A stretch of DNA of 63,857 bases, counting the filler, from Reticulomyxa filosa (taxonomy: Eukaryota > Protista > Foraminifera), in assembly GCA_000512085.1 (NCBI GenBank). It is 21 parts of 21 records of this genome, joined end to end, with 100 filler letters (N's around TTAATTAATTAA, not from the genome) between each part and the next. Parts side by side here need not be neighbours in the genome. Positions count along the whole stretch, not along the records: positions 46,945 to 55,507 come from ASPP01023531.1; 20 more parts are not named here. One strand, given 5' to 3'. The notes under the pieces were generated by a model that searched no databases, was not told the origin of the DNA, and saw only the letters and a program-made list of their open reading frames with translations. A program made the position numbers and the translations under genes. Shown here piece after piece: positions 1 through 55,507 of this stretch; the first letter of the stretch is position 1; every line of letters starts with the position of its first letter.

Positions 1-2597
1 TGGTCAAAACAGTATAATGATATTTTAGACTCAATAATTGATTACTAGACGATGTCATAATCTAATTCAACCAATATGTAAATTGTTGTTGTGTGGTGAC
101 ATTTGGATTGACGACGATGACATTTGGGAATCTTGCTGTCGATGTGCATGTACTGTGCAAAGTATATTTTCTACTGCAGAATAGTGATATTGATGTTAAT
201 GCGAGACACTGTATGTATTATCTGAACATTCGCAAATACGAATCGAATCTATTATAGACTTTATGTATCTTAGAACAAGTCCATTTCTACTGATAGAATG
301 CAGTATATCCTTTTGGCTGAATATTTTGAACGTGCAGCATTTGTTTCTAATTGTTGTGCGCATGTCGCGAATATTGTCAGCTTGAATGAATGTTTCGACA
401 AGCTCTTTCCTGGTTTTGTCTGCAGATTTGTCTCAATGTTCCAACGCCCCTTTCTTGAGTTTCTTCAACTTTCGATGAACTAAGCGAAAGTCTTTTAGAT
501 TTCATCAAGAGTTTTCATTGTAAGAGCTACAGTAATGAGCGTACTTCATTTTCAATTTGATCAGTTGTTTGTAATATCTGCATCAATATACCAAATGCCT
601 TTTGTTACAAAGCACCTGATTCAAAAAAAATTCAATTAAAACATCAAAAAAAAAAAAAATACACTAAAGTTATGTTGTAAAACATTATGTTTTAATCGAT
701 CAATTGCCAACATTTATCAAATTAATTTTATCATTTTTTTCAATTCTTGCGATATACGACGTCCAAAGGCAAAAAATTTTGTATATTCCACTTGTATTCA
801 CGACAGAAACTGATGTTTGTTCGAATTAAGAATCATAGTCTTCAAATTGAAGAATTTTCTTTTGGGTCATAATCTTCATGGTCTTCTTTGTAGTCTTCAT
901 ACGTACAATCTTTTTTTTCTTTTTGAAAGTCCGTCATGAAACTCGGCAGACTGATAACTATGTTTTGTGTATAATGACTATATATGCACTAGTAGCTTAG
1001 CGACTGCTTTGTTATAACTGTTATAAAACTTTTTCGATTTGTTGGTACATATATACAATTTATCTATAGACTGCATAAACTTTGTAAAGCTTTGTTCGCA
1101 TAATACAATTTTTTAGTCCAATTTTGTCAACATTTTTTCTATTAAAAAAAAATACATATATACATATGTATGATATGTACATATTCTTTTTGAAAAGTTT
1201 TGAAAAATGTAAAAAAAAAATTAGTACTTTTTTTTTTGCTTCTTATGAAAGTATTTGTATTGAACTTTGATTTGAACCAATTGCTGATGATTGGTTTATC
1301 CTTCGTCAATAAACAATTGTTTGAATCGATCAGTCAACTTGGAAATAATGAAAAAGATTTCTATTTCCAATTAGTCATCATCTTCGTCTTTGCTTTTGTG
1401 CAAATGTCGTTGCGACAAATTATGTTTCTGCTCGATACTAATTTATTCGGAGGTAAAGTCATAGTTTTTGTTGGAGACATCATTTTCTTTACCAATTGAC
1501 ACATTGACCGCTTCGAATCAGGATGACTTGTCTTAAAGTTTATGTCCAGTTGACTATTTGTCGGGCGCAAAGCACTTGGATTTATCTTATGTGTCGACAG
1601 ATACAGACAATGTCGCGGGCTCAAATTGCGGTGTTTTATCTTCTTGCTCTTGCGATATTGACAATGTGACACTGTAGAATCTTTCATCTATTTTCTTTCC
1701 TTGAGAAAGGGATATCACTTGTGGTCAACTTGTCTTCTTTGTCATTTGTGTTGCATTTGATGTGGTTATGTGCATGACATACATATTACTTTCACAACTT
1801 AGTACCAACAGCAAAAAAAAAATTCCAATTTTGGATAAGTATATCATTTACTTCCAAAAGAAAATGCATGTCTCTTCTTACTAGACGGACAACTTGCTTC
1901 TTTAAAAGGTGTAACAACATATTAGACTCATTCAGATTTCTCATCAGAGTTGAAGGATGACTGCTTATCTTCCAGATCCAATACTGTTAACATCTTCACA
2001 ATTTCGAACAAATTCTCACGTGCATCCACTACAATTTTTATTTTTTTTTAAAGTACCTAATCGATTCAAATGTTTTTGTAATAATTTTGCATAAATACAT
2101 ATATTATACTTATTGTATGTATAAAAATCTGAAATGAAATATAACTTAACGAAGTTGTTCTATGCTCGCTTGAGTTTTATGCAATGTTGATGCCTTTGGT
2201 CCTTACTTTCGTTCGTCTGCACTGCAGTATCGTGAAGAGATTGTGTGCGATTGCAGATGGCGATGTCATGATCATGAAGAATTAACTGTATAATGAGCTT
2301 GACAAAAATTTATTGTTTCCAACTGGGCGGCCCCTTCGTAGAGCAGTTGTCGATAATAATCGATCAGTCGATAGTCTTACGCAAAAGATTGCTTTTTCTT
2401 GCCGCATTCACTGACTTAAATTTCTCTTCATCTATTAACTAGCCAAGTGCAATAGTCTTTAATGCCGGTTACACTAGTCACCGACATTGTTACATGTCAA
2501 CGTTTTTTTGCAATGCGACGAAAATTTGACAATTTGTGTGACAGTAATATTCGCTACACCACTGGTGGACGGACAAAGTGGTGTTGCCAAAGATGAT

Positions 2598-3414
2598 TTA
2601 TGACTTTTTGACTATCGCAACGGCGGTGATTCCAACCCAAGTCTTGCTAGTTCTACATGATAAAACGATTAGTCCGGAACGAACCCTGACATTGACAAAC
2701 ATTTTCATATAGCGATTTTTCTTAGTACGGTGTTTCGCAATTGGTTTCAATGTCATCTTCAAATTTGGTAAATGTTTATCCCCGTGAAAGTCGTAATCTT
2801 CCACACATTGATATTTCAATTCCTTGTTGCAACGTTCGCGGACTTGTTCGATTTTCAATTGGCTTATTTCAAATGATACTACTTCTTCTGTTAATCACCC
2901 ATCTTCAATATCATCACCTGATCCTCCTTTTCCATCAAATGATCCTGCATTCAATACTTCCAATACCATTGTTGCGTAACACCAATTCTGCTTCTTCTCC
3001 AATCCTGCAATATCCACTTCTTCGAGTGATATCTTTTCCACAATCAATCATCACTCGTCCGTTTTCATGTCTGCCGACTTGATCATCGCTTCATAACAAA
3101 AAATAACGTCCATTCTTCAATCCTATGTACAACTCGTTCTTTGGCAGTCTATCCAATCTGCTTATCAAATCGCTCATTCGCAATCCCACTGACAACGCTG
3201 AGTACAGAGAATAACTCGTTATCTTGTACTCGTGGATCAAGTGTGGCTGGCACACTGGCTCTGCTATCGCCACTAAGAAATCGTACGCGGTGTGCCAAAG
3301 AGGCGAAAAGGTTTCTGAAAATATATGCCCATCTGAACACACGCATAATGGTCCCTTCTCATGATCAGGCTTCAATATCAACTTGTTAAAGTTTCGAAAT
3401 GCATCCACTGTCAT
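2598..3414 (-). pseudogene. XPB: TFIIH helicase XPB (ERCC3/SSL2) pseudogene
   Basis: LKPDHEKGPLCVCSDGHIFSETFSPLWHTAYDFLVAIAEPVCQPHLIHEYKITSYSLYSALSVGL matches the XPB N-terminal domain. EDYDFHGDKHLPNLKMTLKP...KMFVNVRVRSGLIVLSCRTSKT matches EEYDF...[22 protein letters not shown] with Walker A destroyed. In-frame stops and internal deletion. Confidence 0.85.
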
Positions 3415-3789
3415 TTTTATTCAGATATTTATGGTAGCTAAGTTTGTCCTGATTCACAGTCCTCAGTCTATCCCGAGTTTCCAGTTTTTAACCAAATACA
3501 ACTGTTTCACATCTCTCTTCCTTTGCTAGTGCTCTATCAAGAAGATTTTTTTTTTATTGTATGCAAAGAGCGCGTTTACTGACTATTCAAAAAAATTATT
3601 TTTTTACATGTGATACTTTTATTATACCACAAATAATCAAATCAACACATTTTTTATTGGACCAAGTGATCGATTTCCTTTTTTTAAAAATTGGAAAAGA
3701 AAACGAAAGTTACACTAGTTTCACACAAAAACTGAAAACGTTAAGCTTTGAAGAGTTTTTAATTGTTCCTCATTTCTTGTATTGAAGAA

Positions 3790-5095
3790 ATGTTAGAGGT
3801 ACTAAATCCTTGGCAAATCTTTGCTATTTGCTGGACGATTGTGACATATCTTTTTGTCATCCCTTTCTTTTTGTTCGAGTTTTATCGATATTGGAAGCAA
3901 AAAGAAAATTTTTTTTTTGCTGGGAGGCACGCTCCACTTGCAATGGCATCATTTTCGGTTACCTTATCACAAAACGGAGGTACAAAAAAGAAGCTTAGAC
4001 ACAAGAGAAAAAACAACTTTTTTTTTTTTTTTTTTCCTTTGAAACAGGGCATATGTCCTACCATACATTAAAAAATGAGCAGAGGAGAGAAGGATACAAA
4101 TAAGCCAAATTCAACTGCTTTAAAAAAAAAAAAAAAAAAAGAAAGAAATTGATAATAACATACGAAATGCACAGTAACGTTTTGTGGAATATTATTGTGT
4201 AAGGTATTTGTGGGAACTTTTGATTTTTGGAAGATGACAGAGACATTCACCACAGCGATATTACTGTCTATTGCGTTCTTGCGATGTTGGCACGTATACT
4301 CAAAATACAGCTACATGAAGTATCGCGCAGAGCAATTGTGGGTCGAAAGTGTCACAGAAGCAGACAGTACTCCACCTTTTATTATACGTCATTATACTGT
4401 GCTCGGAGATATCAGGGTGACATGTAAAATTGTGGTGATCATATTCATCTTCGTATTGATCATATCTTTGTTAATTTTTTATTTATTTTCCTTTTTTTCC
4501 TCTCTTTTAACAAAAAAAAAAAAAGTACTATGTATACGTCAATCTGATACATACATATATGGACATACTATGTGCCAAGAGGGATTAATGTGCGACATTA
4601 TGTATGTGGGGGGGGGGGACGGGACGTACAACAACAACAAAAGATTGTTGTGGATGCAAAACAAGTTCTACGTCGATGCATTAATGTTTGGAATAGCATC
4701 GGTATTAGTATCATGTACGATATTTATAATAACAAAGATTTCAACGATTCATGATTTGATATCATTAAGAGAAGAAGCATTTCTGTACATGCTGTGTTTA
4801 ATAGCAGTGTTTATAATATACTTGGTATTGATCGTGCTGATAAACGTGAATCCCAAGCTCCATCAATTAAACTCAATAGTAGGGGGATTCGTGATACTGC
4901 GCTCACTGTGTTATTATGTGTTCCTATTAATTGGAACGACGTGGGTGTTGCATCAAAAGAAGCGACTGTATAGTGACACGGAAGAAATCTCGTTTACCAC
5001 AAATGATTCATTACTAACGAAAAGTCAGTTATCCAAACATAGTGATAACCAACTCAATTACCCATCCCTTGTGCCAGACAGTGGCAGTATCAAGG

Positions 5096-5152
<57 letters not shown>

Positions 5153-5732
5153 GTAATAGCAATAAAAATATAAACCAATTGGCCATGGCCATTACATATG
5201 GAAGTCAATCTTCTTCTTCTTGTCAAGACACATTGGACCATCCCGACGTCGACAAAAAGGACGACGCGGTCAAATTGACAGCAGCACCGATCATACAACA
5301 GCGTGGATATGGCAATGATGCTGCAGAATTGACAATCAGTCGCACGTCTGTCGACTATCAATCTCCATTGTACCTTTCGGATCGAGTCCGCTCTGTCTCG
5401 CCCGACCAGCAAGTGGAACATGTTCATAGCCAATTCACGACCACTGCTGCTACAACGACAGCAACAACAGCAACAATAACTACTACTATTACTACTACTA
5501 CTTTTACTAGTAATGACAATAGAATTTCTATTCCAAACAACAATAGCAATCATGACAACAAAGATAACAAGAGCGTGCGAAAGCTGTCCCAAGAAAATTC
5601 AAAGAAACATGCTGCAGACAACAGACAACCGCAGTCCCTTTTGAAACACAAGAAATTCGACCTCGACTTTGGCCAACATCAGATCAATCACAACGTCGTT
5701 TATTCCATTTTCGATTTTATTACCGACAAAGA
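3790..5732 (+). CDS. Multi-exon 7TM-like membrane protein, possibly 7TM-RGS type; 3' truncated
   Basis: About 7 hydrophobic segments over several exons; FFAGRHAPL after TM1; ISTIHDLISLREEAFL before TM6; long N/T/S-rich tail reaching the contig end. Confidence 0.6.
5096..5165 (+). repeat. (AAT)n coding microsatellite (poly-Asn)
   Basis: Direct tandem AAT run inside the 7TM ORF. Confidence 0.95.
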
Positions 5733-6830: not shown

Positions 6831-8975
6831 ATNNNNNNNNNNNNNNNNNNNNNNNNNNNNNNNNNNNNNNNNNNNNTTAATTAATTAANNNNNNNNNNNN
6901 NNNNNNNNNNNNNNNNNNNNNNNNNNNNNNNNATCAAAAAAGAACAAATTGCATTGCGACTGAAAACCTATTGTAACACACAAGCATTATACAAAAAAAA
7001 AAAATATATAAACATACAAAAACATCTATTTATCCTTTCTGATAATGAGTTAGTTTCTACAGATTTTTTCTTTTTCTTTTTTTTTGTTGTGTGGATGATG
7101 TGTCAAAATATCGTAACGATGTTTGATTGAGGAGGAAATTATATGTCACAAAATACACAACATATAAATATATTTTTTAAAAAAGAAAAGATTAAACAAA
7201 CACGAAGCTATCCTTTCGAAGACATTGTGTCGTTCTACTACGTGTTATTTTTGTTCATCAACGTATTGCACTATATAAAAAGACTATCGTTTATAAAAAA
7301 ATAGACAAAAATAAACTTAGTTAAAAGTGTTTAGCTTCATTTTATCGTGGCAATATTCGCTGTGGCTATTGCCTTTATTAAACTCGAAACATCCGTCCAA
7401 CTCATTATCGCCGTCGTCATCAGATGCATTCAAGTGCAGACAACAATAACATACACGACTTTTTGCATATATAACATTTTTGTGTACACAGTCAAATATA
7501 TGTTATCATAATGTCAAATGTTTTTATACATTTTTTTAATATAAAAAAAAGTATGTACATATACTCATTTGTTTGTTTATACATATTATAATAATCAATA
7601 ACGTATATAACAAAAAAAAAGAACAATTTGTACCTGTTGGTGACTTTGACACATTGAAATTATACTATTATTTTGTAAATGACATTGTGAAATTGATGAT
7701 ATTTATCACTTTATAGAATATATTGTAGTCTTTAATGTGAGTTTATTGGAGTATTGAATCAGCTTCGGAAAGTGTTGTTGCTATGAGACTATACTTCTGG
7801 AATATCATTAGTATTTCAATCATTTACAATTTTTTAATTGTTTATGGCGAAACTATCTACAAACGAACTATACAAACTCTTCAATTGCTTATTGTTTTCG
7901 GCCACTCAATCATATTATATTTTTTGTTTGTATTCTTTACCATTCTTATCTAGAATGACTCTCAAAACACTTATTCATTTTGATGATAACTAATTTGAGC
8001 ATCGCTGCTTGCTTTCTACGTTAGCTAATGTGCTAATAGTCTATTATATGTTCCACAAGTCAAATGTAATCTTTAATTGTTGCACTAGCAAAATCACGAT
8101 CGAATTTCAACAAAATATCATAATTTCTTTTTTAGTGATAAGCTTTTGTTCATTGAATCCTCAAGTTTCTATCGTTATATCGATTTTGCGCTATGTCGTT
8201 CCTAAGTTATGCTGTTTCGTTTTTTTGACTTGAAATGTTTTATGTTATTTTTTTTGGAGGAAAAACTGACTGATTGATGAACAACTTATTGCTTATAGCA
8301 AGTATATGTGATGAAAAATGTATATATTAACGGCATATGTATTGATGAACAATTTATGTTGGATGAACAACGTATATGTAATGAAAAACTTATTGTGCTA
8401 ATTCAATAAATTCGCCTGAATTGACTGAACGTTCTTTTTGCATTGATATCTGTAAACAGTTATTTCAAACATGAATTTGCACATATACATATCGCAAACA
8501 CAAGTTATTCAATTCAAAAAAAAAAAGTATTATCTTCCTCCAAAAAAAATATATATTGCAATACTAGTAATGGACATAGACTGCGATTATATGATTCGCT
8601 TACTCTTGACCAGATCTCTGTTCGATTTAATCCATTTTTTCTTCATTACGACTGGCACAATGCTCTTTTTTTGGTTTGCCCATACTGCTTTGCTCACTGG
8701 TCACATCAGGACAATTTTACTCCTGTCATCCTCTGTGCTGCCCATTGCTCCTCTATCCAATTAATTTCAATCAACAACGAAGCTAATAAGATGGAGTCTT
8801 TGTTTGTTCAGAAATAAAAAAGGATACTTTTCTCCGTTCTTAATGCATACAATCTAAAATGTTCTTAGTTTCATATCGTTCAATTTTTTGAATGCTATTG
8901 AATTAAATTTGGCATATGTAAAATAGAAAAACATCATTTTTTTAGCACTTAAAAAAGAAAGTTTATAGTCATCTT

Positions 8976-10318
8976 CTAAAGTATTGATTTATTTTTGTTC
9001 CACATGCACACGCAAACACGAGAGTCATCACCCCCACTGGCCATTAAAGAAGCACCGAAAGTGTGTAGAACAGAGGCAGCCAAGCAAGTAACTTTTGAGG
9101 TATGTGGTGAAGAAATTTCAAAATGTCGGAAATGATGTCCGCACATGTGTAAGATCAACGTACAAAGGTGCCTACAGAGATCTGTTTTGACATGTAATTG
9201 TACACGATCAATGGAGTGTAAACATTGCATCAGAGCATCAATAAATACTTTGCTTTCGCAATAACGAATGATTTCAACCCCCAACAAAGAAGTAGTACGT
9301 TTGTCCTTCAATGAAAACACACAACAAAGATCGTTGACCCAACAAACATCCGTTATGCCTTCTTCACACGAAGGCCCGATTGCAGACAAATCAAGTTGCG
9401 ACAATTGTGTGCAATCATTTTGAAACTCATAAATACAACAATTGCCTTTTCCGTTGCCACCACACGCCAAATACTTATCATTTGGCGAAATGCAAATACG
9501 TCCAAACTTATTCCCGGCTTCTCCACAAATAGTTTGCAAATGTTTGTACTGCATATTGCTGTCACTCCCTGCACCACTGGCTCCAAACCTCAGAAATTGA
9601 ATTGTCCCTTCACCTGTCACAAACAAGCATTTGGATTTATCTTGGCACAAACGTGCGTCCGCCAATGCCGTTTGGCCACAGTCAATTGCTGCCAAACATT
9701 CACTTGTCCAGTAGTCAAATACGTAGAGTAGTGCACTTCCACTTCCACCACAACAAATGCGATTTGTACCGTCACTGAAAAATTCCACAAATTGAATGTG
9801 CCACTTGGCTTTGTTAATTCTCCTCCATGGATGCCGGGTACTTGCATTTCTCCCTGCAAACAGATAAATGCTTACCGTGTTATCTAGCCCTCCGCATGCT
9901 ACTAAGTCATTTCTTTTATGTAGATTAAGTGTGGTTACCCATTGACTGTTTATTATATTTTGCAAACAAAAAAAAAAATTTTGAGAATTGAAGGAAGATA
10001 ATATCGTCTTTTTTTCTTTTTTGGGATGAAAGGAGGGAAGGAGTACAAGGATGATGCATTCTTTAACCTTCTTAAAAAAATTGAATATGTTGGAAAATTG
10101 GATTCAGTATTCACTTTGTTTTCCAATATATCGTTCCTGTTAATGTCGTAAATGTAAAGTTTTCCATCTTCACTGACACTTGCAACTCGAATCTCCTCGT
10201 TGTTGTGCGGATTTAAGCACATGTCAACAGCACCTACTTTATTCGCATGATTGCGCAATGTCACTCGTTTGATATTCTCCTCAGTGAACGAAATGTCGTT
10301 CACAGCCAAATTTTCCAT
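8976..10318 (-). CDS. Divergent heterotrimeric G-protein beta-like WD40 protein (2 exons; intron 9946-10067)
   Basis: Splicing AG|gttaaag...aacag|T gives YSIFLRSQWVTT (G-beta HAIPLRSSWVMT). Also TLRNHANKV, VASVSEDGKLYIYD, LVACGGLDNTVSIY and C-terminal PHTSKVTCL...ASGGDDSRV. Confidence 0.8.
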
Positions 10319-46844: not shown

Positions 46845-47477
46845 NNNNNNNNNNNNNNNNNNNNNNNNNNNNNNNNNNNNNNNNNNNNTTAATTAATTAA
46901 NNNNNNNNNNNNNNNNNNNNNNNNNNNNNNNNNNNNNNNNNNNNGATATATTTACATTTTACGAGAAATGATGTAGAGAGATGCAAGAAAGATTATTTTC
47001 TAGAGATTGTGTTAGATAAAAGTGAATTACAACTCTGACCAAGAATTCACTGATAACAACGGTTACCCAAACCATACGGATTTTTACTAGCCAAGAAAAG
47101 TAGAGGTAATACGATGTAAAAAAGTCACAACCAAATTTTCTCAAATCAGAAGCTTTTTAAAAAATTTGGACCAGGGAGAAAATGCTTTAGTAAACAAAAT
47201 TAAATCACTCAAATCAATCATCCCCATAGCCCTTGACAGAGCAAAAACAAAAACCAAAAAAAAACTATCTCCTTTGTGTGTCGTGAAAGTTCCTAATATG
47301 ACGCAATAAATTGCTCTTTGAAACAAATTTTTTATCGCACTGCTCACAACTAAATTTTTTATTTTGAAGATGTGTCCGCTGGTGAATTTCCAACGAATAT
47401 TTTCTGTGTGTATATACGCACGTCATTCTTCGTAAAATTTTATTTACTTTTTTTTGAAGATCTCCAACACAAAATTC

Positions 47478-48209
47478 TCATTTTACTCTCCCCTGATGGA
47501 TAAACATTATGTGCCCATACCTGCTAAATTTCTTGTGACAATGAGTGCATGCAAAAGGCTTTAGCCCAGTATGATGAGCGTTCATGTGTTTACTGAGGCT
47601 ACTTGAGTCAACAAAAGAGCTCAGACAGCACGGACATGTCTTGGATCCAGTGGAGAGGAGGGTTTTGAAATGAGTTCGATAATGATTTTGCATGTCCCAT
47701 CCGGTGCCAAATGTTTTGTTACATCCAACAAACAAACATGAAAAAGGTTTGACATGAACTTTCCGGATATGACATGTTAATCGATTTTTTGTGCTGAAGG
47801 CTTTGTCGCAATTACTACATTTATGGGCTAAGGAGATTTTTTTTTTTGATTTGCGACATTTCGACTTGTGCAATGAAAATTCTTCTGAGGTTAAGAAAAG
47901 TGACCAACACTTTCGGCACGTGATTACTATTCATTCCATATTTTACAAACGATTGTACAAATCCAAATATATTACATACAAACATGGCAGAAAAAGATGT
48001 GCTTTGCTCGAGATACAGAGACAAGTGAGCATAATTTTCAAGTTTTGTTTGGACTTACAAGAAAATAGACAGCTCCTTTCGTGAAAACGGATAGAGCCTG
48101 GGTTGTTTGGGAAAATAGCGCCACATCCTGGGCATTGCGTGGTGCTTTTGACGGCGTCACAAGTGTGGCCAGACCCGTTGAAAACACAGCTTAGGAGGAT
48201 CGAACCCAA
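47478..48209 (-). CDS. C2H2 zinc finger protein (four or more fingers); structure approximate
   Basis: HKCSNCDKAF...H...H; KPFSCLFVGCNKTF...HYRTH; CPCC...HMNAHHTGLKPFACTHCHKKF. Confidence 0.85.
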
Positions 48210-48747
48210 AATTGAAGATAAAGGTCGATAATTGCTTATGATTACCTTTTGACATAGAATAACCAGTATGATTTATATCTGTACGAGTTGCCGGGCCTGC
48301 CACGGGGAAAATACCTTGTGTGAAAAGCGCACAAGTAACTCACTTACAGGGAACCTGTTTTTGGATATTTTTGTTTCATAGAAAAATATCTACAGAAAAA
48401 AAATCATGTTATGATAACATAAACACTTAAAGACTTGTTTAAAAATACATTGTTTTGCCGAGGATAAAATTAATTAGTTATGGTTGGATAATTGAAAAGT
48501 AAATTGAAAAAATTAAAGGCACCAGAAAAGATACCAAAACAAAGCAGACAATAATTTTTCGTTGTTTTTCTTTCCAAAACTAAATTCTATTTCACAAAAC
48601 AAGGGATAACTTTTTTTTGTGTATATCATTTTGGTAAAGATTCACTAACGAAAAGCGCAAATTTTTGAAAGTTCTAAAACGTATTTTTTATTTTTATTTT
48701 TTTTTGTGGTTTTAGATAGTTTGAACAACACATTAAAAGATTTTTTT

Positions 48748-50528
48748 TTACAAGTAAGCGCTGCATGTATTATTGATTTCATTTGAAGCGTTGGCATTCT
48801 CGGTTTGAATAAATTCGGCGTCATCTTCATTTATGGAATTACTGCTCGTTGGTTCGTTTTCTAACATCCACATTTCCACATCGCTAATTTCACCACCACC
48901 TTGACCATGGATCAAATCTTGTTGTTCTCCATGGAAATGCCAATCATCATTTCCACCTCGCCAATACTCGCTATCGCACTCACTGTTAGCTTCGTATTGA
49001 TTAAACGGAAAAACGTCACAATGGAACCGTCCAGGTGTCGTCGGAAGAAACGGGCTGTTAGCGTCCTCTCCAGGGTCAAAATCTGGAGACGACTCACGAT
49101 CCCGATCAGCAGCATAACCGTTGGCATCAAGATTAGCCATAGCCTGGCCATGTTGTTCTTCGTCCCGTGATTTTTCTTGTGTCTCGTCGCCACTGCTTGC
49201 GCACGCAAATGGATGCACCGTAATCTCTTCGCTTCGTTGGTTGTTTGGCCAAACGCTATTAAGCTCGTGTTTCCCCTGGTTTTCCTTTTCGTTTTCGTTT
49301 TCACATTTGTGTTTGTCAGATACACTTCTTCCCAGGCTTGAACGTGACACGTACGTTCTCTTGCTTCCTTTATTGTTTCGGTTGTTCTGTTGCCGTTGTC
49401 CAGAGGGGAGTTCAGATCTTCCTTTTATTGTCTTTCTTTGTGTATACGTAGGAGAATTAGGGCGACACATGTCAAGTTCAACTTTCCCCTTTCTTTGTCA
49501 TCCTTTTTTTTCTTATTATTATTACTATTTTTCTTTTTCTTTTCCTCCTGTGTACAATCTCTATTGGCAGTAGGGAAGCACTTTAAACACACAAAAGAGT
49601 GTCTCTTGTGATACACGTTATCCAAATGGCTAACAACATGAGCACAAGCCCCTTGTTTTCCAATCATCGAGACTTTTTTCATGCCCTCCATCACTCCTCT
49701 TCTGCGATTGTCTCGCATCTCCATCCTTTTGACCCTTTCCCGCCCAAAACCACAGAAGACGCATGAAGGGTCAGAAGGGTAACAAGACACACTTCTCATA
49801 CCTCCACTCTTCACCTCCTCACTGTTCGTGAGGCGGTGTTCTTGTCCTCGTTGTCCTTCTTTTTCTTTGTCTTCTTTTCCCTTTCTTTCTGCACTGCGTT
49901 TCATGTCCTCAGGTCGATCAACGTCGTGTTTATCCCGTGCTACGGTCGTCTTGAATTCCAAGCTGTCCGACTTTCTCATATTCCGACCGTGATTTGTCAC
50001 GAACCAGCCGCATTTCTGCAGTTTTCCGCCATTGCGCGAAAAATACATCCTTGGTCTATCCATTCTTGCCAAAGGCGAGTTTTTGGTTTGCCAACCGCAA
50101 CGAGGTATTTGCCACAACAGCAACTTTTGCTTTTGCAACTTCTTTTTCTTCTCTTCTTCTTTCTCCGTTTTTATCATTGCTTTCGCTGCTGATGACGGTT
50201 TGAAGGCAGCCTGCTTCGAACTTTCGTTGCTGCGGTCTGGTCTAGATATCATCGATACTACTAGTTGGTCGTCTTTTGGAATGCGATACGTATGGAATTG
50301 CTCACTTGCTGACCATAGTTGAGATTTGCCACTACTCTCCTTTTTTGCCATTGACAGGCGCATTTTCGCAAGCGACACAAATCCTTTCAACACTTCGTAC
50401 CGCCAACGTAAAAGATGCTTGGAAACACGTCCCGTCTTCTTATCTCTTGGAGACATTTTGTAACGACGTCCGTCATTGCAAATTAAATGATACTTGCACA
50501 TTCTTGCTGATTTCGTAATAATAGACAT
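48748..50528 (-). CDS. Unknown basic/low-complexity protein with Cys/His clusters (probably two exons)
   Basis: Two long overlapping minus-strand ORFs (367 and 240 aa) with CVFC...C.H...H...CLKC. Confidence 0.5.
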
Positions 50529-51243
50529 TTTTTTTTTTTTTTACGATATTTAAAAAATTTTTAACTTTAGTCTAAGACCCCAAAATTTTGTGTAGTTATT
50601 GAAGAGCTTCGTGAGAAAAACAAAAAGCTAACTGTTGCACTGAAATCACACGCATGATAATGTTTTTATGCTTTTCTTAAAAAAAACATCACCAAATTAA
50701 GATGCAAAGCAAGATTTGCAACAAACCGAACCCGACCAACAAATAATCCAAAAAAACAACAGAAATACAAATTACTGCAAAACAAAATCCACCAGTTTCT
50801 GATCATTGGCCTCTTTTTACTTTTTCTTAATCATAGGGACTTGTCTTTATGGTGGGCAACTAAGACACCCAAGGAAAAAGAACCAGACAAAACACGGAAA
50901 AAAAAACAAGAAAAACAAAATCAGCTGTCGCATTTAATTATGCACTTTGAGTGGTCGGTTTTTCCGTGTTTTTTGTTTGATTTCAAATGAAACCAGTTAT
51001 GCCCAAATTCAACACAGCAATTTTTTCTTTTATGTTTTAAAAAAAATTTAGTTTTGAGGTCAAAACTAAAATGAGCAAAAATCAAATAATGACACCAAAG
51101 AAAAAGTTAAAACAAAAACACGAAAATTAGAGAAAAAAAACTCATATGTTTTTTATTTCTTGTTGCTAGCTTTTTTTAAAATTGCTCTTGCTTTTTTTTT
51201 TTTAAGTTATTCCTTCCTTCAATTTTGTGAATGTTGGAATAAA

Positions 51244-54200
51244 TCATGCCTTTAATGCTTGTTCGATGTTTTCGGAAGTCAATTCGTGGAATTCACTTTT
51301 ACAATCCCGTTCAATAAGATCAAATAGTGAGATCTTATTCTTTAGGACCAAAGAGATCACATGCACAGGAGCACTAGTCACACCAGTGCAAGCCATACGT
51401 TTCGAATATTGATGTGGATAATCCAAGGTATAATTTATTATCACATGGGCTTGTGTTTTCCACAATTCGTGCGTCTGTTCCCGTCATTGATACAACATTG
51501 TTGATTTGTTTAATTTCTTGAGTTTTATTGTTTAAACAAAGAGATAAAAAAAAAGCTTTAACTGGAGCTCTCTCACTGCAGATGAGGTATTCAAGCTTTC
51601 CTGAAACAAAGTTTGCAATTAATTGACTTGATTCTCTGGAAAATGATCGATCGTGTAGTATTTGAACACGGAACTTACCACGCAAACTCTCATACAATTC
51701 AAGAGCCTTGTTATTGTCGATGCATTGTGTTGTGTTGTGTTGTGTTGTGAAATAATAAAAATCAAGCCTTTATTTATTTATTTTTAGAAAAAAGATTAGC
51801 AAAAGAATGTAAAATGCACATACCTCGGAAGAGCCGCACCAAATCAAACCAGACTTGTGTGGATTCAGTTGACAAATCAAGGCAAGTATTTCCTTTTTGT
51901 CATCTAGAGGCTTCAAAGGAACAAACCAATGCGAAAACTTTTGTCCTTGTCGGAAATCAACAACAGTTGGCGATGACACAATGACGTTAGCTGTTTGACT
52001 CACTGATTGACACCACGAATTCGAAAACAATGCACACGCAATTCCTTCTGGAATTTTTTGAAACGCAGTTTTGGTGAAGTTTGCATCCTCTCCCAATAGT
52101 CCATCGCAGCCCAATAAGTATACCGCCACTATGTTTGGGATTAGATCTCTCTCTCCTTTGTCCAGCAGCATTCGTATCGGACGTGGTTTTCCTGTAATAA
52201 AACAAAACAAAAAAAAATTCATGTTTTAAATTTTTTAAAAAAATGAAGATGGATATGATACATATACATATATGCCATATATGTACATATATGTAATGTT
52301 GCATTATAAATGAACAATATGTAATATATACTTAACCAATGAAAACATTTCGACCACGCGAAAAGCCGTCTCGGTAGTTATCAACTTTTCGCTCGTCAAG
52401 CACTCGAACTTTCAAATCAGGGGTTTGCTGGCCAATCTTTTCGAGTAATTGATAGATATAACTGCAGTGATCATCATTGGAACATATGACAATGACATGC
52501 GCAGGGTCTTTTCTCACATATAGTCGGTACAAAGCTGCAATCACCAACAGCGTGGATTTGCCGCTACCAGCAGGTGACAATATAATTGCATCTTTTCCCA
52601 AAGTCAGCAATGGCAATGCTTCCTCTTGCATCTTGTGCCACTTTTCAATGCCTTGTGCCTGCAGTCCCGAGACCAAAAATGCGGACAATTTTTTTGATAT
52701 CTGTGATTGCTTCTGCGGGATACGACATGCCTGCATGTTCGGATATTGGTCCCCAGAATTTGCTGCTTTGACTTTCATCTCGGCCCCTGTTATCTCGGTC
52801 CCTGTTATCTCTACGGCCTCCCCAAGAAGAACCAGTATCTTTGTCTCCCTCTCGAGGGGTTCTCCTTCGGTCTGAGTCTCTTCCAAATCTTCCTTCCGAT
52901 CCTCTTCCTCTTCTTCCAAAGCCTTTTTCACGACTGTCTTTTTCGTCTTCAAATCTCTCTCGACCACTCGTCTGTCGTCCGTCGCGAGAGCCACGCAAGC
53001 TGTCATTGCCTCGGCCTCGGGGTGCCCCTTCCACAAACAGTGTACGACGACCCCCACCTGTGGGGACACCGTTCACATCTCTTGTACGTAAAGGCGACTC
53101 ACGTGACGTCGTTTCCGCCAGTCTGCGGCTTGGCTGGTAGTAATTCTTGCGCGCCGCGTTGGAAATTGCGTCTTTCAGCAACTGTTCCACTTTGCTCTCC
53201 GATGTTCTTATAGACAAAAAGTGGAAGAATTTGATCCAATCCGAGCATTTGACAATGTTCAAGCACGCATTCTATTGATATCCCAATATGGAATACATCA
53301 TTTCCAATACAATAATTACAAAAAAAAAAAAAATATGAACCATACAAAGTCTCAATTTGATTTTCTTTCAAAGAAGATTCTCTCTCTCTCTCTCACACCT
53401 GCAAAAGGGATGGCGCCTTGCCGGTAAATCCTCCATAATTGTGATTGTAGTTTTCCAAGGTTTTGTGGATGACAACCTCCGGAGGACGGCCAAATTCGTG
53501 CAAAAATGTGTATTGCAGCATCACACGGATACGCGACTTTTCGGTGGCGCCAAAGGTCAGATCCAGGCGCTCTTTCGTGGACAATTGCAAGTCTTCCAGC
53601 TGCTTGTGCGTGGCAACGCAGGTGGCAGCGTCTCGACAAAAGAGCTCTTCAAAGAATGGCTTGCTCACCGAATGCCAGTCGTACGAAGGCGTCAACAACA
53701 AGTGCATCAACACTTTGCCCAAATTCGGCAGATTTTCACGGTCGCGTGCCTCGCTGTCGCTTGCGGTGAAAACACGGATTTGTGCCTCTGCAAATTGGGT
53801 CATCTGAGGAACCTTTGAGTGCAAAAATAATAACAAATGGTGTAAGCAAGACCAAACCGAGAGTGAGTGAAGCAGTTGCTCCCTTGGCGGAATTTTGTCT
53901 CCTGAAAAATGATTGCTCAGTGCTTCCACATTTCTGTTTTGTGTATATGTATGATATAAATACACAACAAACAAGACACGTCATCATAAGTATTTCAAAG
54001 TGTCTAATTTTCTTTGGATTTTTTTTTTTTTTTGGTAAACAAAAATGAATTAAATAAAAATGAGCTAGGAATATAAATTCATTCGGACAACTCAACGCAT
54101 TAAGCAGTTCACAAATCGTTTCCAGGGCGGCCTTTGGTGTAAAGGTCCCCTCTGGTGCTAACAAGGCAAGATACTTTTCGATTTCTGGAAGTGCATTGTT

Positions 54201-55507
54201 GCCGTGAGTGGTGTTAATGACTAAAGGCAGAAAATGAGTAAACTCCTCCTTGGTGGAATCGACTCGAATGTTGAGTTTTGCCCACGATGGCAAGGAAATG
54301 TAATCTGACGAAACACGGAACTTTGAAATTTGCCGTTTTTTGAACTATCGGTAGTGTCCTTTTTTTTGGAGGATCTTGCTTTAAATTCAACCTGAAGCAT
54401 CATTCCTATTATGTCTTGCGAAAATGTTTTTTTGGAGTGATAGCATTTCAATCGATTCGAACGAATTATTGCTCCCTTTTTCAGGATGAAATTCCAAAGG
54501 TCACAGACACGATCTATAATGGGTAAAGTGTTATGTATGTGCGTTACAATCCTCATGCCTCTTTTGATCTTTTTTTTTTTTTTTTTAAAGTGATGTCTTT
54601 GGGCCAGAATTAAGTTAGGTTATTTACAATAACAACAACAACAGAACAAAACACATACGGCATTGGGCTAATTCTTGTGTCGTCAAGTGTTCGAATATTT
54701 TCAAGACATAATTATGGAGACGATTGACGTGAGCATCTTTGGACGGAATACCATATTTAAACAACACGTTCCATTCCACTCCTCCACAAATGTCCCACAA
54801 ATACTGTTCTTTATTTTGCGTGGAATACTCTTCAATAGTCAAATAGTTGTCCAATTGTGGCACGGGATGTTTTAAGTTGCTAAAGTTCAATTTCACGTGT
54901 CCCGACTATTAATGTGCATTTTGTATTTTATATTTATATGCGTTGTGTATATAATAAATATTATTCCACTTTGCACTTTGCATCTCACAATGTGTTTTCC
55001 CTCACATACACACACTCTCTTTCTCTGATCCTTTGCCCTTTGTATATTCAAATAACATAACATGCACATATCATATAAGCGACTGTTCATTTGTGCATGT
55101 AGCAAAGTAAGTAGTTCATACCGCAAGTCCAACAATAGGAATCAACACTTCGTCTCGAAAGGACGGAGGCATCGGATGAGATGTACTTTCGGCACCATTA
55201 ACAAAAAATCGCAAGACCCCATCATCGAAATCGGCCGCACAAACCACGTAATCTCCGTCAGCAAAGCCCTGAGGAAATTCGTGAGTAAACACCAACTCGT
55301 AAGGTCGTTTGTGAATTAATAGCGCCGTCACCGAGTCTGCCGAGTACCGATTTCCCAGCGCCATAAACTCGCACTCACCACTAATGCGTTCATAAGTACT
55401 TTTCACGCACCATCCCACACGCACACCTGTCAAACTATTTGCAGATAAGTTAATTTTCACTATTTCTGCTTCAAAATACACTCTCGCGAAACTACATTCT
55501 ATTTTCC
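51244..55507 (-). CDS. Multidomain gene: SPRY - F-box - uncharacterised helical domain - RGG-rich linker - degenerate DEAD-box helicase fold; 5' truncated
   Basis: Phase-compatible GT-AG introns join the exons, e.g. GLA|SGHVKLNF, AQC|HRVCDLW, LLQ|NACLNIV (intron 53272-53398), FI|GKPRP (intron 52192-52336), ERAP|THELW. One frameshift at a T7 run (52689-52695) and one frameshift or 47-nt intron near 54340 must be assumed. Confidence 0.7.

What the first reader, a model, noticed from the sequence alone, without database searches (positions are those of the whole stretch)
51244..55507. Apparent single gene fusing SPRY, F-box, an orphan helical domain, RGG linker and a DEAD-box fold
Seen: minus-strand exons splice in phase from a SPRY domain (YFEAEI..GVRVGW..GDYVVCAADFDDG.LRFFVNG..VKLNF) to an intron-split F-box (LHNYVLKIFEHLTTQELAQC|HRVCDLW). 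A helical domain of about 300 aa follows (LKCYHSK..IIG, FTHFLPLVI..H, HHLLL, PNLG, RLDLTF, WIKFF..LKDAI..YY), then an RG/RD-rich linker and two RecA-like lobes. From memory the helical domain resembles an uncharacterised region found beside UBC domains in fungi and protists (unverified). Inference: an SCF-type substrate receptor physically tied to RNA-binding modules, possibly RNA/RNP-guided ubiquitylation. I know of no described protein with this architecture.
Basis: partly seen in the sequence, partly recalled or inferred. Interest (0 to 1): 0.8.

Follow-up and report, generated by a model that had tools for sequence, protein, structure and literature searches.

The report
Foraminiferal SPRY–F-box–UBR-like–dead-helicase fusion gene
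This is one real gene of the foraminiferan Reticulomyxa filosa that joins a SPRY domain, an F-box, a ubiquitin-ligase module shaped like that of UBR4, an arginine/glycine-rich linker and a catalytically degenerate DEAD-box fold; the same fusion occurs as a single protein in other foraminifera, and I found no publication describing it.

Summary
The piece is a whole 8,563-bp contig of Reticulomyxa filosa, and it cuts the gene at its 5' end. Nine minus-strand exons with GT..AG introns join in phase:
- SPRY
- an intron-split F-box
- a module of about 380 aa
- an RG/RD-rich linker
- a two-lobe DEAD-box-like core

The frame change at 52689-52695 is a 1-nt length difference in an A7 run. It is neither an intron nor a gene boundary, because three R. 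filosa paralogues read straight through it in one ORF.

Transcript-derived proteins of Elphidium margaritaceum, Nonionella stella and marine metatranscriptomes (1,350-1,600 aa) carry the same order in one ORF, preceded by a UBC (E2) domain. The contig edge hides that part here.

The "orphan helical domain" is not a new fold. Models of two relatives match the UBR4 hemiRING-UZI E3 module (Z 21) and yeast Ubr1 (Z 12.8).

In this subfamily the E2 lacks its catalytic Cys. The helicase keeps only the P-loop.

The wider family (231 representatives) is mostly UBC-F-box-module, with varied add-ons (SPRY, S1, VWA, WD40). The RNA-linked SCF-receptor mechanism remains an inference. No publication on this architecture was found.

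The parts
55122..55505 (-). Exon 1 (5' end cut by the contig edge at 55507): SPRY domain
   Evidence: Pfam SPRY E 8.5e-8. Aligns to P0154 residues 272-403. 59% identical to paralogues L001 and L002. Donor GTATGA at 55121.
54659..54905 (-). Exon 2: last SPRY strand (VKLNF), spacer, first two F-box helices (ends ..ELAQC, phase 1)
   Evidence: Aligns to P0154 407-497. The intron 54658-54514 splits the F-box; the paralogue L001 also has an interruption in its F-box, position not compared precisely.
54392..54513 (-). Exon 3: third F-box helix (RVCDLW) and start of the hemiRING-like subdomain, with the family-invariant Cys (LKCYHSK)
   Evidence: Aligns to P0154 500-541. The invariant Cys column is kept. 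In two models the Cys lies about 5 residues after the point that aligns to the start of the UBR4 chain (4832/4833), near zinc ligand C4838.
54321..54391 (-). Ambiguous stretch: either a 71-nt GT..AG intron, or a coding surface loop with a 1-nt length difference in the A6 run 54336-54341
   Evidence: GTTGAA...AAAG, phase 0. In L001 the equivalent stretch is continuous coding, and both window frames resemble it on either side of the A6 run. It corresponds to a low-confidence loop in the model.
54097..54320 (-). Exon 4: hemiRING-like beta-subdomain (FTHFLPLVINTTH) and first UZI-like helix
   Evidence: 64% identical to L001 and L002. Conserved P and H columns are kept. Donor GC|GTTGAG at 54096 gives ..ELLNA|NVEAL.., which fits the family consensus.
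53399..53933 (-). Exon 5: UZI-like helical bundle (HHLLL, PNLG, W, E..F.R, RLDLTF)
   Evidence: phmmer against 1.84 billion representatives: 231 hits at E<=1e-3. Relatives' models match UBR4 8btl_A at Z 21.1 and Ubr1 7mey_A at Z 12.8, and 8b5w at Z 21.4.
53125..53271 (-). Exon 6, first part: last UZI-like helices (..DWIKFF..LKDAI..KNYY)
   Evidence: Aligns to the C-terminal family columns W..FF and GYH. It is continuous with the linker in the same exon and frame.
52746..53124 (-). Exon 6, middle: RG/RD-rich low-complexity linker (126 aa)
   Evidence: 23% Arg, 17.5% Gly, 16 RG/GR dipeptides. Equivalent RGG-rich linkers occur in P0154 and P0160. RG-rich tails follow the module in P0044 and P0076.
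52689..52695 (-). A7 homopolymer where the reading frame jumps by one base
   Evidence: Window..SEHAGMSYPAEAITDIKK in one frame, then LSAFLVSGLQ.. in the next. L001, L002 and L003 read ..SEHAAMSYP..QLP(V/I)FLQSGL.. in one frame, and the spacing is the same in L001.
52337..52745 (-). Exon 6, last part: DEAD-box-like N-lobe, first half (Q-motif region; motif I SPAGSGKS)
   Evidence: Pfam DEAD E 1.6e-8. DDX6 E 4e-6. 57-61% identical to three paralogues. Donor G|GTTAAG.
51824..52191 (-). Exon 7: rest of the N-lobe (GKPRP in place of GTPGR; LGCD in place of DEAD; SNS in place of SAT) and start of the C-lobe (..GLIWCGSSE)
   Evidence: Aligns to P0154 1298-1414 and P0102 538-637. Motif table. No direct PDB sequence hit.
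51563..51706 (-). Exon 8: C-lobe middle (..ILHD..; ..FVSGKLEYLICSERAP)
   Evidence: Aligns to P0154 1448-1471 and to L001. The pattern matches motifs IV-V of DEAD-box proteins, but the RG.D part of motif V is lost.
51244..51474 (-). Exon 9: C-lobe end (VIINYTLDYP; KRMACTGV in place of HRIGRTGR) and stop codon TGA 51246-51244
   Evidence: Aligns to P0154 1484-1548 and to L001 at 55%. P0154's equivalent part aligns to DDX6 and eIF4A up to their C-termini.
52787..52832 (-). 46-nt 'intron' used by the GenBank model RFI_27062 (ETO10317.1) to change frame; judged an annotation artefact
   Evidence: P0001 reads ..GDKDTG|AEMKVKAAN... The skipped stretch and the frame-1 text after it are homologous to continuous coding sequence in three paralogues and in P0154. 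The frame the model switches into has no counterpart.

Best explanation
Shown: positions 55505-51244(-) are the 3' ~1,060 codons of one R. filosa gene. It belongs to a foraminiferal subfamily with this order: E2-like domain without catalytic Cys, CxxCGH motif, SPRY, F-box, a module predicted to fold like the UBR4/Ubr1 (hemi)RING-UZI E3 module, an RG-rich disordered linker, and an eIF4A/DDX6-type DEAD-box core. The core keeps the P-loop but has lost DEAD, SAT and the motif VI arginines. The E2-like and CxxCGH parts lie beyond the contig edge here. The frame jump at the A7 run is a 1-nt indel.

Not resolved: I favour an assembly error for that indel (about 0.7) over a real mutation. I cannot decide this, because no reads were available.

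Inferred mechanism (about 0.35):
- The protein is a non-catalytic adaptor.
- The F-box docks Skp1, and through it a cullin-RING ligase.
- SPRY, together with the RG linker and the ATPase-dead helicase fold, holds protein/RNP clients.
- The pseudo-E2 packed on the UBR-like module is a rigid core inherited from an ancestral tethered E2-E3 enzyme, possibly still a ubiquitin or E2 docking surface.
- The helicase fold cannot unwind RNA. At most it clamps RNA or nucleotide, or serves as a protein interface.
For: One gene:
- All ten window exon pieces tested (nine exons; exon 6 in two) have collinear, same-strand counterparts in locus L001; nine recur in L002 (exon 8 not detected) and three on the 2-kb contig L003.
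- In those three loci the end of the module, the linker and the DEAD N-lobe are one ORF.
- The first ~45 residues of that exon belong to the family module in unrelated organisms.

Single transcript elsewhere:
- P0160 (Elphidium margaritaceum, MMETSP1385), P0159 and P0161 (Nonionella stella), P0154, P0157 and P0158 (JGI and Tara), and P0166 all show UQ_con, SPRY, F-box, DEAD in that order.
- P0154 is one ORF, 310-4977, on a 5,549-nt contig with UTR-like flanks.
- Window exons map in order along P0154.

Selection: pN 0.26-0.30 against saturated pS 0.74-0.85 for both halves versus the paralogues, so dN/dS is about 0.1.

Fold:
- AF2 models have pLDDT 90-92 and pTM 0.90-0.91.
- UBR4 scores Z 21.1 and 21.4 over 301-312 residues, and Ubr1 Z 12.8. 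The next rows are at Z 5.6 or below and are mostly Skp1-bound F-boxes on residues 1-46. Foldseek gives E 4.9e-5.

F-box.

Pseudo-enzymes:
- The E2 site reads ICLD in UBC-only members, but VHLD, VNLD, LVLD or VKL(P/Q) in this subfamily.
- DEAD motif table. P0154's core aligns full-length to DDX6 (E 1e-11) and eIF4A.
Against: - No RNA or DNA reads could be laid (none was listed), so splicing and the A7 length in R. filosa itself are unverified.
- The window copy carries one, possibly two, homopolymer frame problems. L002 has a 1-nt frameshift in its last exon. Some copies may therefore be decaying.
- The GenBank annotation splits the paralogues into separate genes.
- The UBR4 likeness rests on predicted structures of relatives (P0154, P0004), not of the window protein. 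Sequence searches find no UBR4 match.
- The UBR4 CxxC..HxxC zinc ligands are not all present (one invariant Cys, one near-invariant His).
- Skp1 binding, RNA binding and any ligase activity are untested.
- Most canonical RNA-contact motifs of the DEAD fold are lost.
Confidence: 0.78

Rival explanations
1. This particular copy is a young pseudogene. The A7 frame jump (and perhaps the A6 one) is real, so the locus would make at most a truncated SPRY-F-box-module-RG protein ending at 52645, while paralogues supply the full-length protein.
For: There is a stop at 52645 in the upstream frame. A second possible frame problem lies at the A6 run 54336-54341. Another paralogue (L002) has a non-homopolymer 1-nt frameshift in its last exon. 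The family has at least four copies in this genome.
Against: There are no in-frame stops or other lesions in about 1,060 codons. The exons downstream of the jump show the same strong purifying signal as the upstream ones (dN/dS about 0.1). Both suspect sites are homopolymers in a very fragmented draft assembly (N50 3.6 kb; PMC13746701). Removing one A restores the same spacing as in L001.
Confidence: 0.25
2. Two independent genes: an F-box/SPRY protein ending at the 52645 stop, and a separately transcribed helicase-like gene that starts at a Met in the other frame.
For: Both frames are open over 53069-52645, and the downstream frame contains Met codons. GenBank calls separate genes at the paralogous loci.
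Against: Three paralogues have a single ORF across the junction. Seven transcript- or metatranscript-derived proteins from other organisms are single polypeptides with the same order. The alternative frame upstream of the A7 run has no homologue.
Confidence: 0.04
3. Same gene, different mechanism: a self-contained UBR-like E3 rather than an SCF receptor. The hemiRING/UZI-like module would recruit and activate a free Rad6-type E2 as UBR4 and Ubr1 do. The pseudo-E2 would act as a regulator or ubiquitin binder, and the F-box helices would be a structural or Skp1-only element.
For: The module matches the E2-binding, E2-activating module of UBR4 and Ubr1. In catalytically intact relatives a UBC domain is tethered to it, and Rad6/UBE2A-type structures head the UBC structural matches, though they tie within 1 Z unit with other E2s. 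pTM 0.90 for the whole of P0004 implies a fixed E2-module arrangement.
Against: The F-box is conserved at sequence level across the family, which argues for real Skp1 binding. The zinc-ligand set of the hemiRING is incomplete. No activity data exist.
Confidence: 0.3
4. The GenBank model is right: a real 46-nt intron (52832-52787) changes frame, and the A7 run is correct as assembled.
For: GT..AG ends are present. The model ETO10317.1 (P0001) uses this intron.
Against: It removes sequence, and then reads a frame, with no counterpart in the paralogues or P0154. The rejected frame carries the conserved ..SEHA(G/A)MSYP.. block. 46 nt is shorter than every other intron of the gene (71-216 nt). The same model also reads through true introns.
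Confidence: 0.03

Closest known systems
UBR4 hemiRING-UZI E3 module (PDB 8B5W, 8BTL) and the RING plus cap-helical (UZI) region of yeast Ubr1 (7MEY)
   Same: Predicted fold of the beta-subdomain plus a helical bundle like UBR4's 11-helix UZI: Z 21.1-21.4, 301-312 residues aligned, covering UBR4 4832-5183. Ubr1 gives Z 12.8. In UBR4 this module binds and allosterically activates UBE2A/B (PMC10873205). In the wider family here a UBC domain is fused to it.
   Different: There is no detectable sequence similarity. The C2HC zinc-ligand set is not conserved. An F-box precedes the module. There is no UBR box. The proteins are 600-1,600 aa, not giant N-recognins.
F-box/SPRY receptors FBXO45 / Fsn (FSN-1), and SPRY-SOCS Gustavus, which target the RGG-DEAD-box protein Vasa (from my own knowledge, not checked here)
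   Same: An F-box and a SPRY domain in one cullin-RING receptor. There is a functional link between SPRY receptors and an RGG-plus-DEAD-box protein.
   Different: The order is reversed (SPRY before F-box). Here the RG linker and the DEAD-like fold are part of the same polypeptide, not a substrate. The extra pseudo-E2 and UBR-like module are absent from FBXO45.
FBH1 (FBXO18), the F-box DNA helicase
   Same: It is the one well-known F-box protein that carries a helicase fold in the same chain. Its F-box appears among the structural matches (9xzj_F, Z 5.0).
   Different: FBH1 is an active SF1 UvrD-type DNA helicase. Here the fold is an SF2 eIF4A/DDX6-type core with its catalytic motifs lost.
E2-E3 chimeras UBE2O and BIRC6, and inactive E2 variants (UEV: Mms2, TSG101)
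   Same: A UBC fold is built into a large multidomain ubiquitylation protein. In this subfamily the UBC fold lacks the catalytic Cys, as UEV domains do.
   Different: The partner domains differ (F-box, UBR-like module, SPRY, DEAD-like). Relatedness beyond the UBC fold was not examined.
Minimal DEAD-box proteins eIF4A, eIF4A-III and DDX6/Dhh1; DDX1 (DEAD-box with an inserted SPRY)
   Same: Two RecA lobes align end to end with DDX6 (E 1e-11) and eIF4A (8e-10) in the orthologue P0154. DDX1 shows that SPRY and DEAD can coexist in one protein.
   Different: Motif II is LGCD, VDGD, LDCD, FDAD or LEAD. Motif III is SNS or TSS. The motif VI arginines are absent, and Ia and V are degenerate. SPRY is not inserted in the helicase core.

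Membership tests
SPRY domain (PF00622) | Match to the family profile above its curated cut-off | tested here: met
   32.8 bits against 26.3, E 8.5e-8, profile positions 1-108 of 121 on exon 1. The remaining strand (VKLNF) is in exon 2.
F-box proteins (SCF substrate receptors) | F-box motif of about 40 aa forming three helices | tested here: met
   The window's F-box is intron-split and was not joined. Its halves align to the F-box of P0154, which passes the Pfam cut-offs (F-box-like 27.7 against 24.3; F-box 22.1 against 20.5). All nine PDB hits of the family profile are F-boxes. Model residues 1-46 superpose on Skp1-bound F-boxes at Z 4-5.4.
F-box proteins (SCF substrate receptors) | Binds Skp1 and assembles with Cul1-Rbx1 | not testable with these tools
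   Needs pull-down or co-expression. No complex prediction tool was available.
DEAD-box RNA helicases (SF2) | Two RecA-like lobes with DEAD-box topology | tested here: met
   The N-lobe is detected directly. Both lobes are shown through P0154's full-length alignment to DDX6 and eIF4A and the collinear homology of window exons 6-9 to it.
DEAD-box RNA helicases (SF2) | Motif I (Walker A, A-x-x-G-x-GKT) | tested here: met
   SPAGSGKS in the window, in three paralogues and in P0154.
DEAD-box RNA helicases (SF2) | Motif II D-E-A-D, motif III S-A-T, motif VI H-R-x-G-R-x-G-R | tested here: not met
   The window has LGCD, SNS and KRMACTGV. The loss is shared by paralogues and orthologues. It should therefore be filed as DEAD-box-like, not as a helicase.
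UBR-type (hemi)RING-UZI E3 module | Fold: a RING-like beta/zinc subdomain packed on an 11-helix UZI bundle | tested here: met
   Two independent AF2 models of relatives: Z 21.1 (8btl_A) and 21.4 (8b5w), with Ubr1 at Z 12.8, far above the next rows. The window exons map onto the whole module, with 18 of 28 columns that are at least 90% conserved identical. The window protein itself was not folded, because exons were not joined.
UBR-type (hemi)RING-UZI E3 module | C2HC zinc site (UBR4 C4838, C4841, H4887, C4890) | tested here: inconclusive
   There is one invariant Cys (window LKCYHSK) near the C4838 position, and the +3 residue is Ser or Thr. There is one near-invariant His (..INTTH). An upstream CxxCGH motif might contribute, but it lies outside the window, and no model coordinates were available.
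UBR-type (hemi)RING-UZI E3 module | Binds and activates a Rad6-type E2 | not testable with these tools
   Biochemical property (PMC10873205).
UBC (E2) enzymes | UBC fold with HPN motif and catalytic Cys | tested here: not met
   This part is not in the window because of the contig edge. In paralogues and orthologues the fold is present (UQ_con E 1e-15 to 1e-16), but the Cys is replaced by His, Asn, Val or Lys.

The most novel reading that the evidence does not exclude
The module behind the F-box defines an undescribed, widespread eukaryotic class of tethered E2-E3 ligases: an E2 domain fused through an F-box to a UBR4/Ubr1-type hemiRING-UZI module. The tethered E2's best structural matches include Rad6-type E2s, but these tie with other E2s. 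Lineages have repeatedly equipped this scaffold with nucleic-acid-binding parts (S1 repeats, RG tails, a LigT/2H domain, DEAD-like cores). The foraminiferal branch, including this gene, would be a catalytically silenced derivative that couples RNP recognition to cullin-based ubiquitylation. A further twist is that in the R. filosa paralogues the E2 active-site Cys is Lys, the substitution that biochemists use to trap a stable E2-ubiquitin isopeptide.
Probability: 0.25. Interest if true: 0.8.

Novelty: new variant of a known kind. Interest (0 to 1): 0.62.

Why it matters
It corrects a fragmented annotation: at four R. filosa loci one long gene is called as two to five 'hypothetical proteins' or as one distorted partial model.

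More broadly, it gives a fold-level identity to a domain that Pfam does not cover and that occurs in at least 231 sequence clusters, among them foraminifera, an amoebozoan (Copromyxa), a diatom (Seminavis) and chytrid fungi (Gaertneriomyces). That domain resembles the E2-binding E3 module of UBR4 and Ubr1, until now described only in UBR N-recognins.

If the intact members are active, they are a new kind of E2-E3 chimera that could be tested directly in vitro. The foraminiferal subfamily shows how such an enzyme can be turned into a multi-pseudoenzyme scaffold (dead E2 plus dead helicase), possibly linking RNP recognition to SCF ligases.

Tried and rejected
(1) RNA evidence. The look-up of sequencing runs (kind rna) listed no run, so read laying was not used and splicing is inferred only.

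(3) The ESM-Atlas feature search suggested RIH (RyR/IP3R) domains for exon 5 (score 0.94, but recognition below the reliable range). I rejected this. The structure searches put UBR4 and Ubr1 far ahead, and a ryanodine receptor appears only at Foldseek E 0.33.

(4) Direct PDB sequence searches with exons 7, 8 and 9 found nothing meaningful; the neuropilin, uL16 and other hits at E>0.01 are chance. The window SPRY has only a marginal RyR1-SPRY hit.

(5) Pfam at E up to 10 finds no family, and in particular no UBR4 family, for the module beyond the F-box. The profile-against-PDB sequence search likewise finds none.

(6) A word-based protein search with the module of P0010 returned only 3 hits and no informative names.

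(7) A tiny-intron explanation for the frame jump (14-nt GT..AG around 52725-52712) was considered and dropped as implausibly short and unnecessary. An in-frame 45-nt candidate intron with a strong donor at 53102 was left open.

(8) Seven literature searches found no description of a UBC/F-box/UZI or SPRY/F-box/DEAD protein. The library lacks most subscription journals, so this is weak evidence of absence.

The spliced protein was never assembled, searched or folded. Exons were searched one by one by reference, and transcript-derived relatives stood in for the whole protein.

Full report
**Source and setting**

The piece 46945-55507 is an entire 8,563-bp contig of the draft genome of the naked foraminiferan Reticulomyxa filosa (GCA_000512085.1). 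A phmmer search of exon 5 against 1.84 billion representatives returned a 98%-identical protein, P0001. The cluster look-up identifies it as ETO10317.1, 'hypothetical protein RFI_27062, partial', on a contig of exactly 8,563 bp.

The assembly is very fragmented: 50,809 scaffolds, N50 3.6 kb, mean intron 87 bp (PMC13746701). The contig edge at 55507 cuts the gene's 5' end.

**The observation**

Pfam finds two domains on the minus strand:
- SPRY on 55119-55505 (E 8.5e-8, above the curated cut-off).
- DEAD on the ORF 52335-53069 (E 1.6e-8).

The DEAD N-lobe matches DDX6, DDX39B, DDX19 and eIF4A chains in the PDB (best E 4e-6).

I derived a nine-exon model. All eight introns are GT..AG, 71-216 nt and 66-81% A+T, against G+C-richer exons. 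All exon phases agree. The exons are:
- 55505-55122
- 54905-54659
- 54513-54392
- 54320-54097
- 53933-53399
- 53271-52337
- 52191-51824
- 51706-51563
- 51474-51244

- The 53398-53272 intron is exactly the one proposed.
- The F-box is split after ..ELAQC (phase 1) and resumes ..RVCDLW.

Each was used by reference.

**The frame change at 52689-52695**

This is an A7 run, not a junction. Upstream, the frame reads ..SEHAGMSYPAEAITDIKK. The next frame then reads LSAFLVSGLQAQGIEKW.., and the old frame stops at 52645.

Three paralogous loci of the same genome read the equivalent text in one frame (..SEHAAMSYP..QLP(V/I)FLQSGL..). The spacing is identical in L001 if the window's run is one A shorter.
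- In L001 a single 437-codon ORF (8016-9329) covers the last helices of the module, the RG-rich linker and the DEAD N-lobe.
- L002 and L003 likewise keep the linker and N-lobe in one frame.

The 46-nt 'intron' 52832-52787 in the GenBank model is therefore a device to get round the indel. The frame it switches into has no homologue.

A second ambiguous spot is 54391-54321. It is either a 71-nt intron or a coding loop with a 1-nt difference in the A6 run 54336-54341. In L001 this stretch is continuous coding.

From memory, and unverified, the assembly included 454 reads, which miscount homopolymers. No sequencing run was listed, so I cannot decide between assembly error and real mutation.

**One gene or two**

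Three lines of evidence point to one gene.

- Collinear paralogues. The ten window exon pieces tested (exon 6 was searched in two parts) all have collinear, same-strand counterparts in L001; nine recur in L002 (exon 8 not detected) and three on the short contig L003, at 33-65% identity.
- Purifying selection. Both halves have evolved under similar purifying selection. pN is 0.26-0.30 against saturated pS of 0.74-0.85, so dN/dS is about 0.1.
- Single-ORF orthologues. The same order occurs in single ORFs from other organisms:
  - P0154: 1,555 aa, one ORF with UTR-like flanks on a 5.5-kb JGI contig. Tara transcript assemblies sit in the same 90% cluster.
  - P0160 from the Elphidium margaritaceum transcriptome MMETSP1385.
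  - P0159 and P0161 from Nonionella stella.
  - P0157 and P0158.
  - P0166 from a more distant lineage.

  Each of these proteins scanned shows UQ_con, SPRY, F-box, DEAD in that order; P0157 carries the same domains but no SPRY in its precomputed list.

Window exons align in order along P0154 (272-403, 407-497, 500-541, 579-606, 669-831, 1158-1283, 1298-1414, 1448-1471, 1484-1548).

**The 'orphan helical domain'**

Exon 5 has 231 relatives at E<=1e-3. Among 67 longer members:
- 41 carry an N-terminal UBC domain.
- 13 have a detectable F-box-like match.
- 6 have SPRY, 4 have S1 RNA-binding repeats and 3 have VWA.
- Single cases carry a LigT/2H domain or DEAD plus Helicase_C.
- Longer proteins add WD40 or CLU-LRR.

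Members named by their sources include an amoebozoan (Copromyxa), a diatom (Seminavis) and chytrids (Gaertneriomyces).

The conserved unit is about 380-420 aa: F-box, then a beta-rich subdomain with an invariant Cys, then a helical bundle.

AlphaFold2 models are confident:
- A UBC-type member (P0004, 67-sequence alignment): pLDDT 92, pTM 0.90.
- The module of P0154 (72 sequences): pLDDT 90.4, pTM 0.91.

Both models match the crystal structure of the UBR4 E3 module (hemiRING plus UZI):
- Z 21.1 and 21.4, rmsd 4.3-4.5 over 301-312 residues, spanning UBR4 4832-5183.
- Yeast Ubr1 1218-1653 follows at Z 12.8.
- Everything else is at Z 5.6 or below.
- Foldseek agrees (E 4.9e-5, TM 0.51/0.60).

The remaining top rows are mostly Skp1-bound F-boxes on model residues 1-46. 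The family profile's only PDB sequence hits are F-boxes.

In UBR4 this module binds UBE2A/B through a one-zinc hemiRING, and the UZI bundle helps activate E2~Ub. UBR1-3 are predicted to share the UZI bundle (PMC10873205).

The similarity here is in fold only:
- There is no sequence-level UBR4 match.
- The C2HC ligand set is incomplete. There is one invariant Cys near the C4838 position and one near-invariant His. An upstream CxxCGH motif might contribute.

The window keeps 18 of the 28 columns that are at least 90% conserved.

**Pseudo-enzymes at both ends**

E2 end. In UBC-only members the E2 active site reads ..ICLD.. In every member of the SPRY-DEAD subfamily the Cys is replaced:
- His in P0154, P0158 and P0161.
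- Asn in Elphidium.
- Val in P0166.
- Lys in the R. filosa paralogues L001 and L002.

The window's own E2 part lies beyond the contig edge.

Helicase end. The core is of the minimal eIF4A/DDX6 type. P0154's C-terminus aligns over both lobes (E 1e-11 and 8e-10). Motif by motif:
- Motif I survives (SPAGSGKS).
- DEAD is LGCD in the window (VDGD, LDCD, FDAD or LEAD elsewhere).
- SAT is SNS.
- Motif VI is KRMACTGV.
- Ia and V are degenerate.

ATP hydrolysis and unwinding are therefore not expected, and canonical RNA contacts are doubtful.

The linker is 23% Arg and 17.5% Gly, with 16 RG/GR dipeptides. Orthologues have true RGG repeats. RG-rich tails also follow the module in Copromyxa and another member that lack the helicase.

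**How it most likely works**

Shown: the gene structure, the domain order, the conservation, the predicted folds and the loss of catalytic residues.

Inferred, at about 0.35: the protein is a non-catalytic adaptor.
- Its F-box docks Skp1 and so a cullin-RING ligase.
- SPRY, together with the RG linker and the dead helicase fold, holds protein or RNP clients.
- The pseudo-E2 packed on the UBR-like module is a rigid remnant of a tethered E2-E3 enzyme, possibly a ubiquitin or E2 docking surface.

The repeated fusion of S1, RG, LigT and DEAD-like parts to this scaffold gives circumstantial support to an RNA/RNP connection.

The main mechanistic rival, also at about 0.3, is an autonomous UBR-like E3 that recruits a free Rad6-type E2. 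Rad6/UBE2A structures head the UBC matches but tie with other E2s.

**Novelty**

The sequence is already in GenBank, but as a distorted partial model. Its paralogues are split into two to five 'hypothetical proteins' each. Seven full-text searches found no description of this architecture or of a UBC/F-box/UZI family. This is limited evidence, since most subscription journals are not held.

All the component domain types are known. The combination, and the fold assignment of the module, are new to my knowledge. I therefore rate it a new variant of a known kind.

**What I could not do**
- Lay reads, because none was listed.
- Read earlier findings, because they were not open.
- Inspect model coordinates for a zinc site.
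- Fold or search the joined window protein, which was left out by instruction.
- Test any binding or activity.

Noticed in passing
window 47268-47873 (-): The neighbouring ORFs encode classical C2H2 zinc fingers (zf-C2H2 E 4e-10 and 8e-9). This is probably a separate multi-exon gene downstream of the finding.
   Followed up: partly
window 48751-50528 (-): Two long overlapping ORFs (240 and 367 aa) rich in K, E, R and S have no Pfam match. They lie in a relatively G+C-rich stretch (0.41-0.49). Their nature is unknown.
   Followed up: partly
window 54336-54341 (-), within 54391-54321: A second possible homopolymer (A6) frame problem, or else a 71-nt intron. Both window frames resemble the continuous coding sequence of paralogue L001 on either side of the run.
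   Followed up: partly
window 53058-53102 (-): A strong donor-like site (CAC|GTGAGT) and an AG 45 nt downstream would remove 15 codons in frame from the start of the linker. There is no evidence either way.
   Followed up: no
L001 4599-4799 and L002 8596-8796: In the R. filosa paralogues the E2 active-site Cys position is Lys (..VKLP../..VKLQ..), and HPN is HPY or HPL. Cys-to-Lys is the laboratory substitution that yields a stable E2-ubiquitin isopeptide, so a natural case may be worth testing.
   Followed up: partly
L002 13215-13235: Paralogue L002 has a 1-nt frameshift in its last exon that is not in a long homopolymer. This is either an assembly error or decay of that copy.
   Followed up: partly
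L001, L002, L003 (GenBank gene calls): At each paralogous locus the one long gene is annotated as two to five separate 'hypothetical protein' genes. P0002 (RFI_20824) starts inside the UBC domain and ends by reading into an intron.
   Followed up: yes
family members P0119, P0045, P0050, P0114, P0079: The UBC-F-box-module scaffold occurs with very different add-ons: two S1 domains inserted before the F-box; VWA before the UBC plus WD40 after the module; CLU/eIF3-p135 plus LRR before the UBC; VWA after the module.
   Followed up: partly
model of P0004: The tethered UBC domain's best structural matches are Rad6/UBE2A-type E2s, the E2s that partner UBR4 and Ubr1. They are within 1 Z unit of UBE2G2 and UbcH5, so this is only suggestive.
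   Followed up: no
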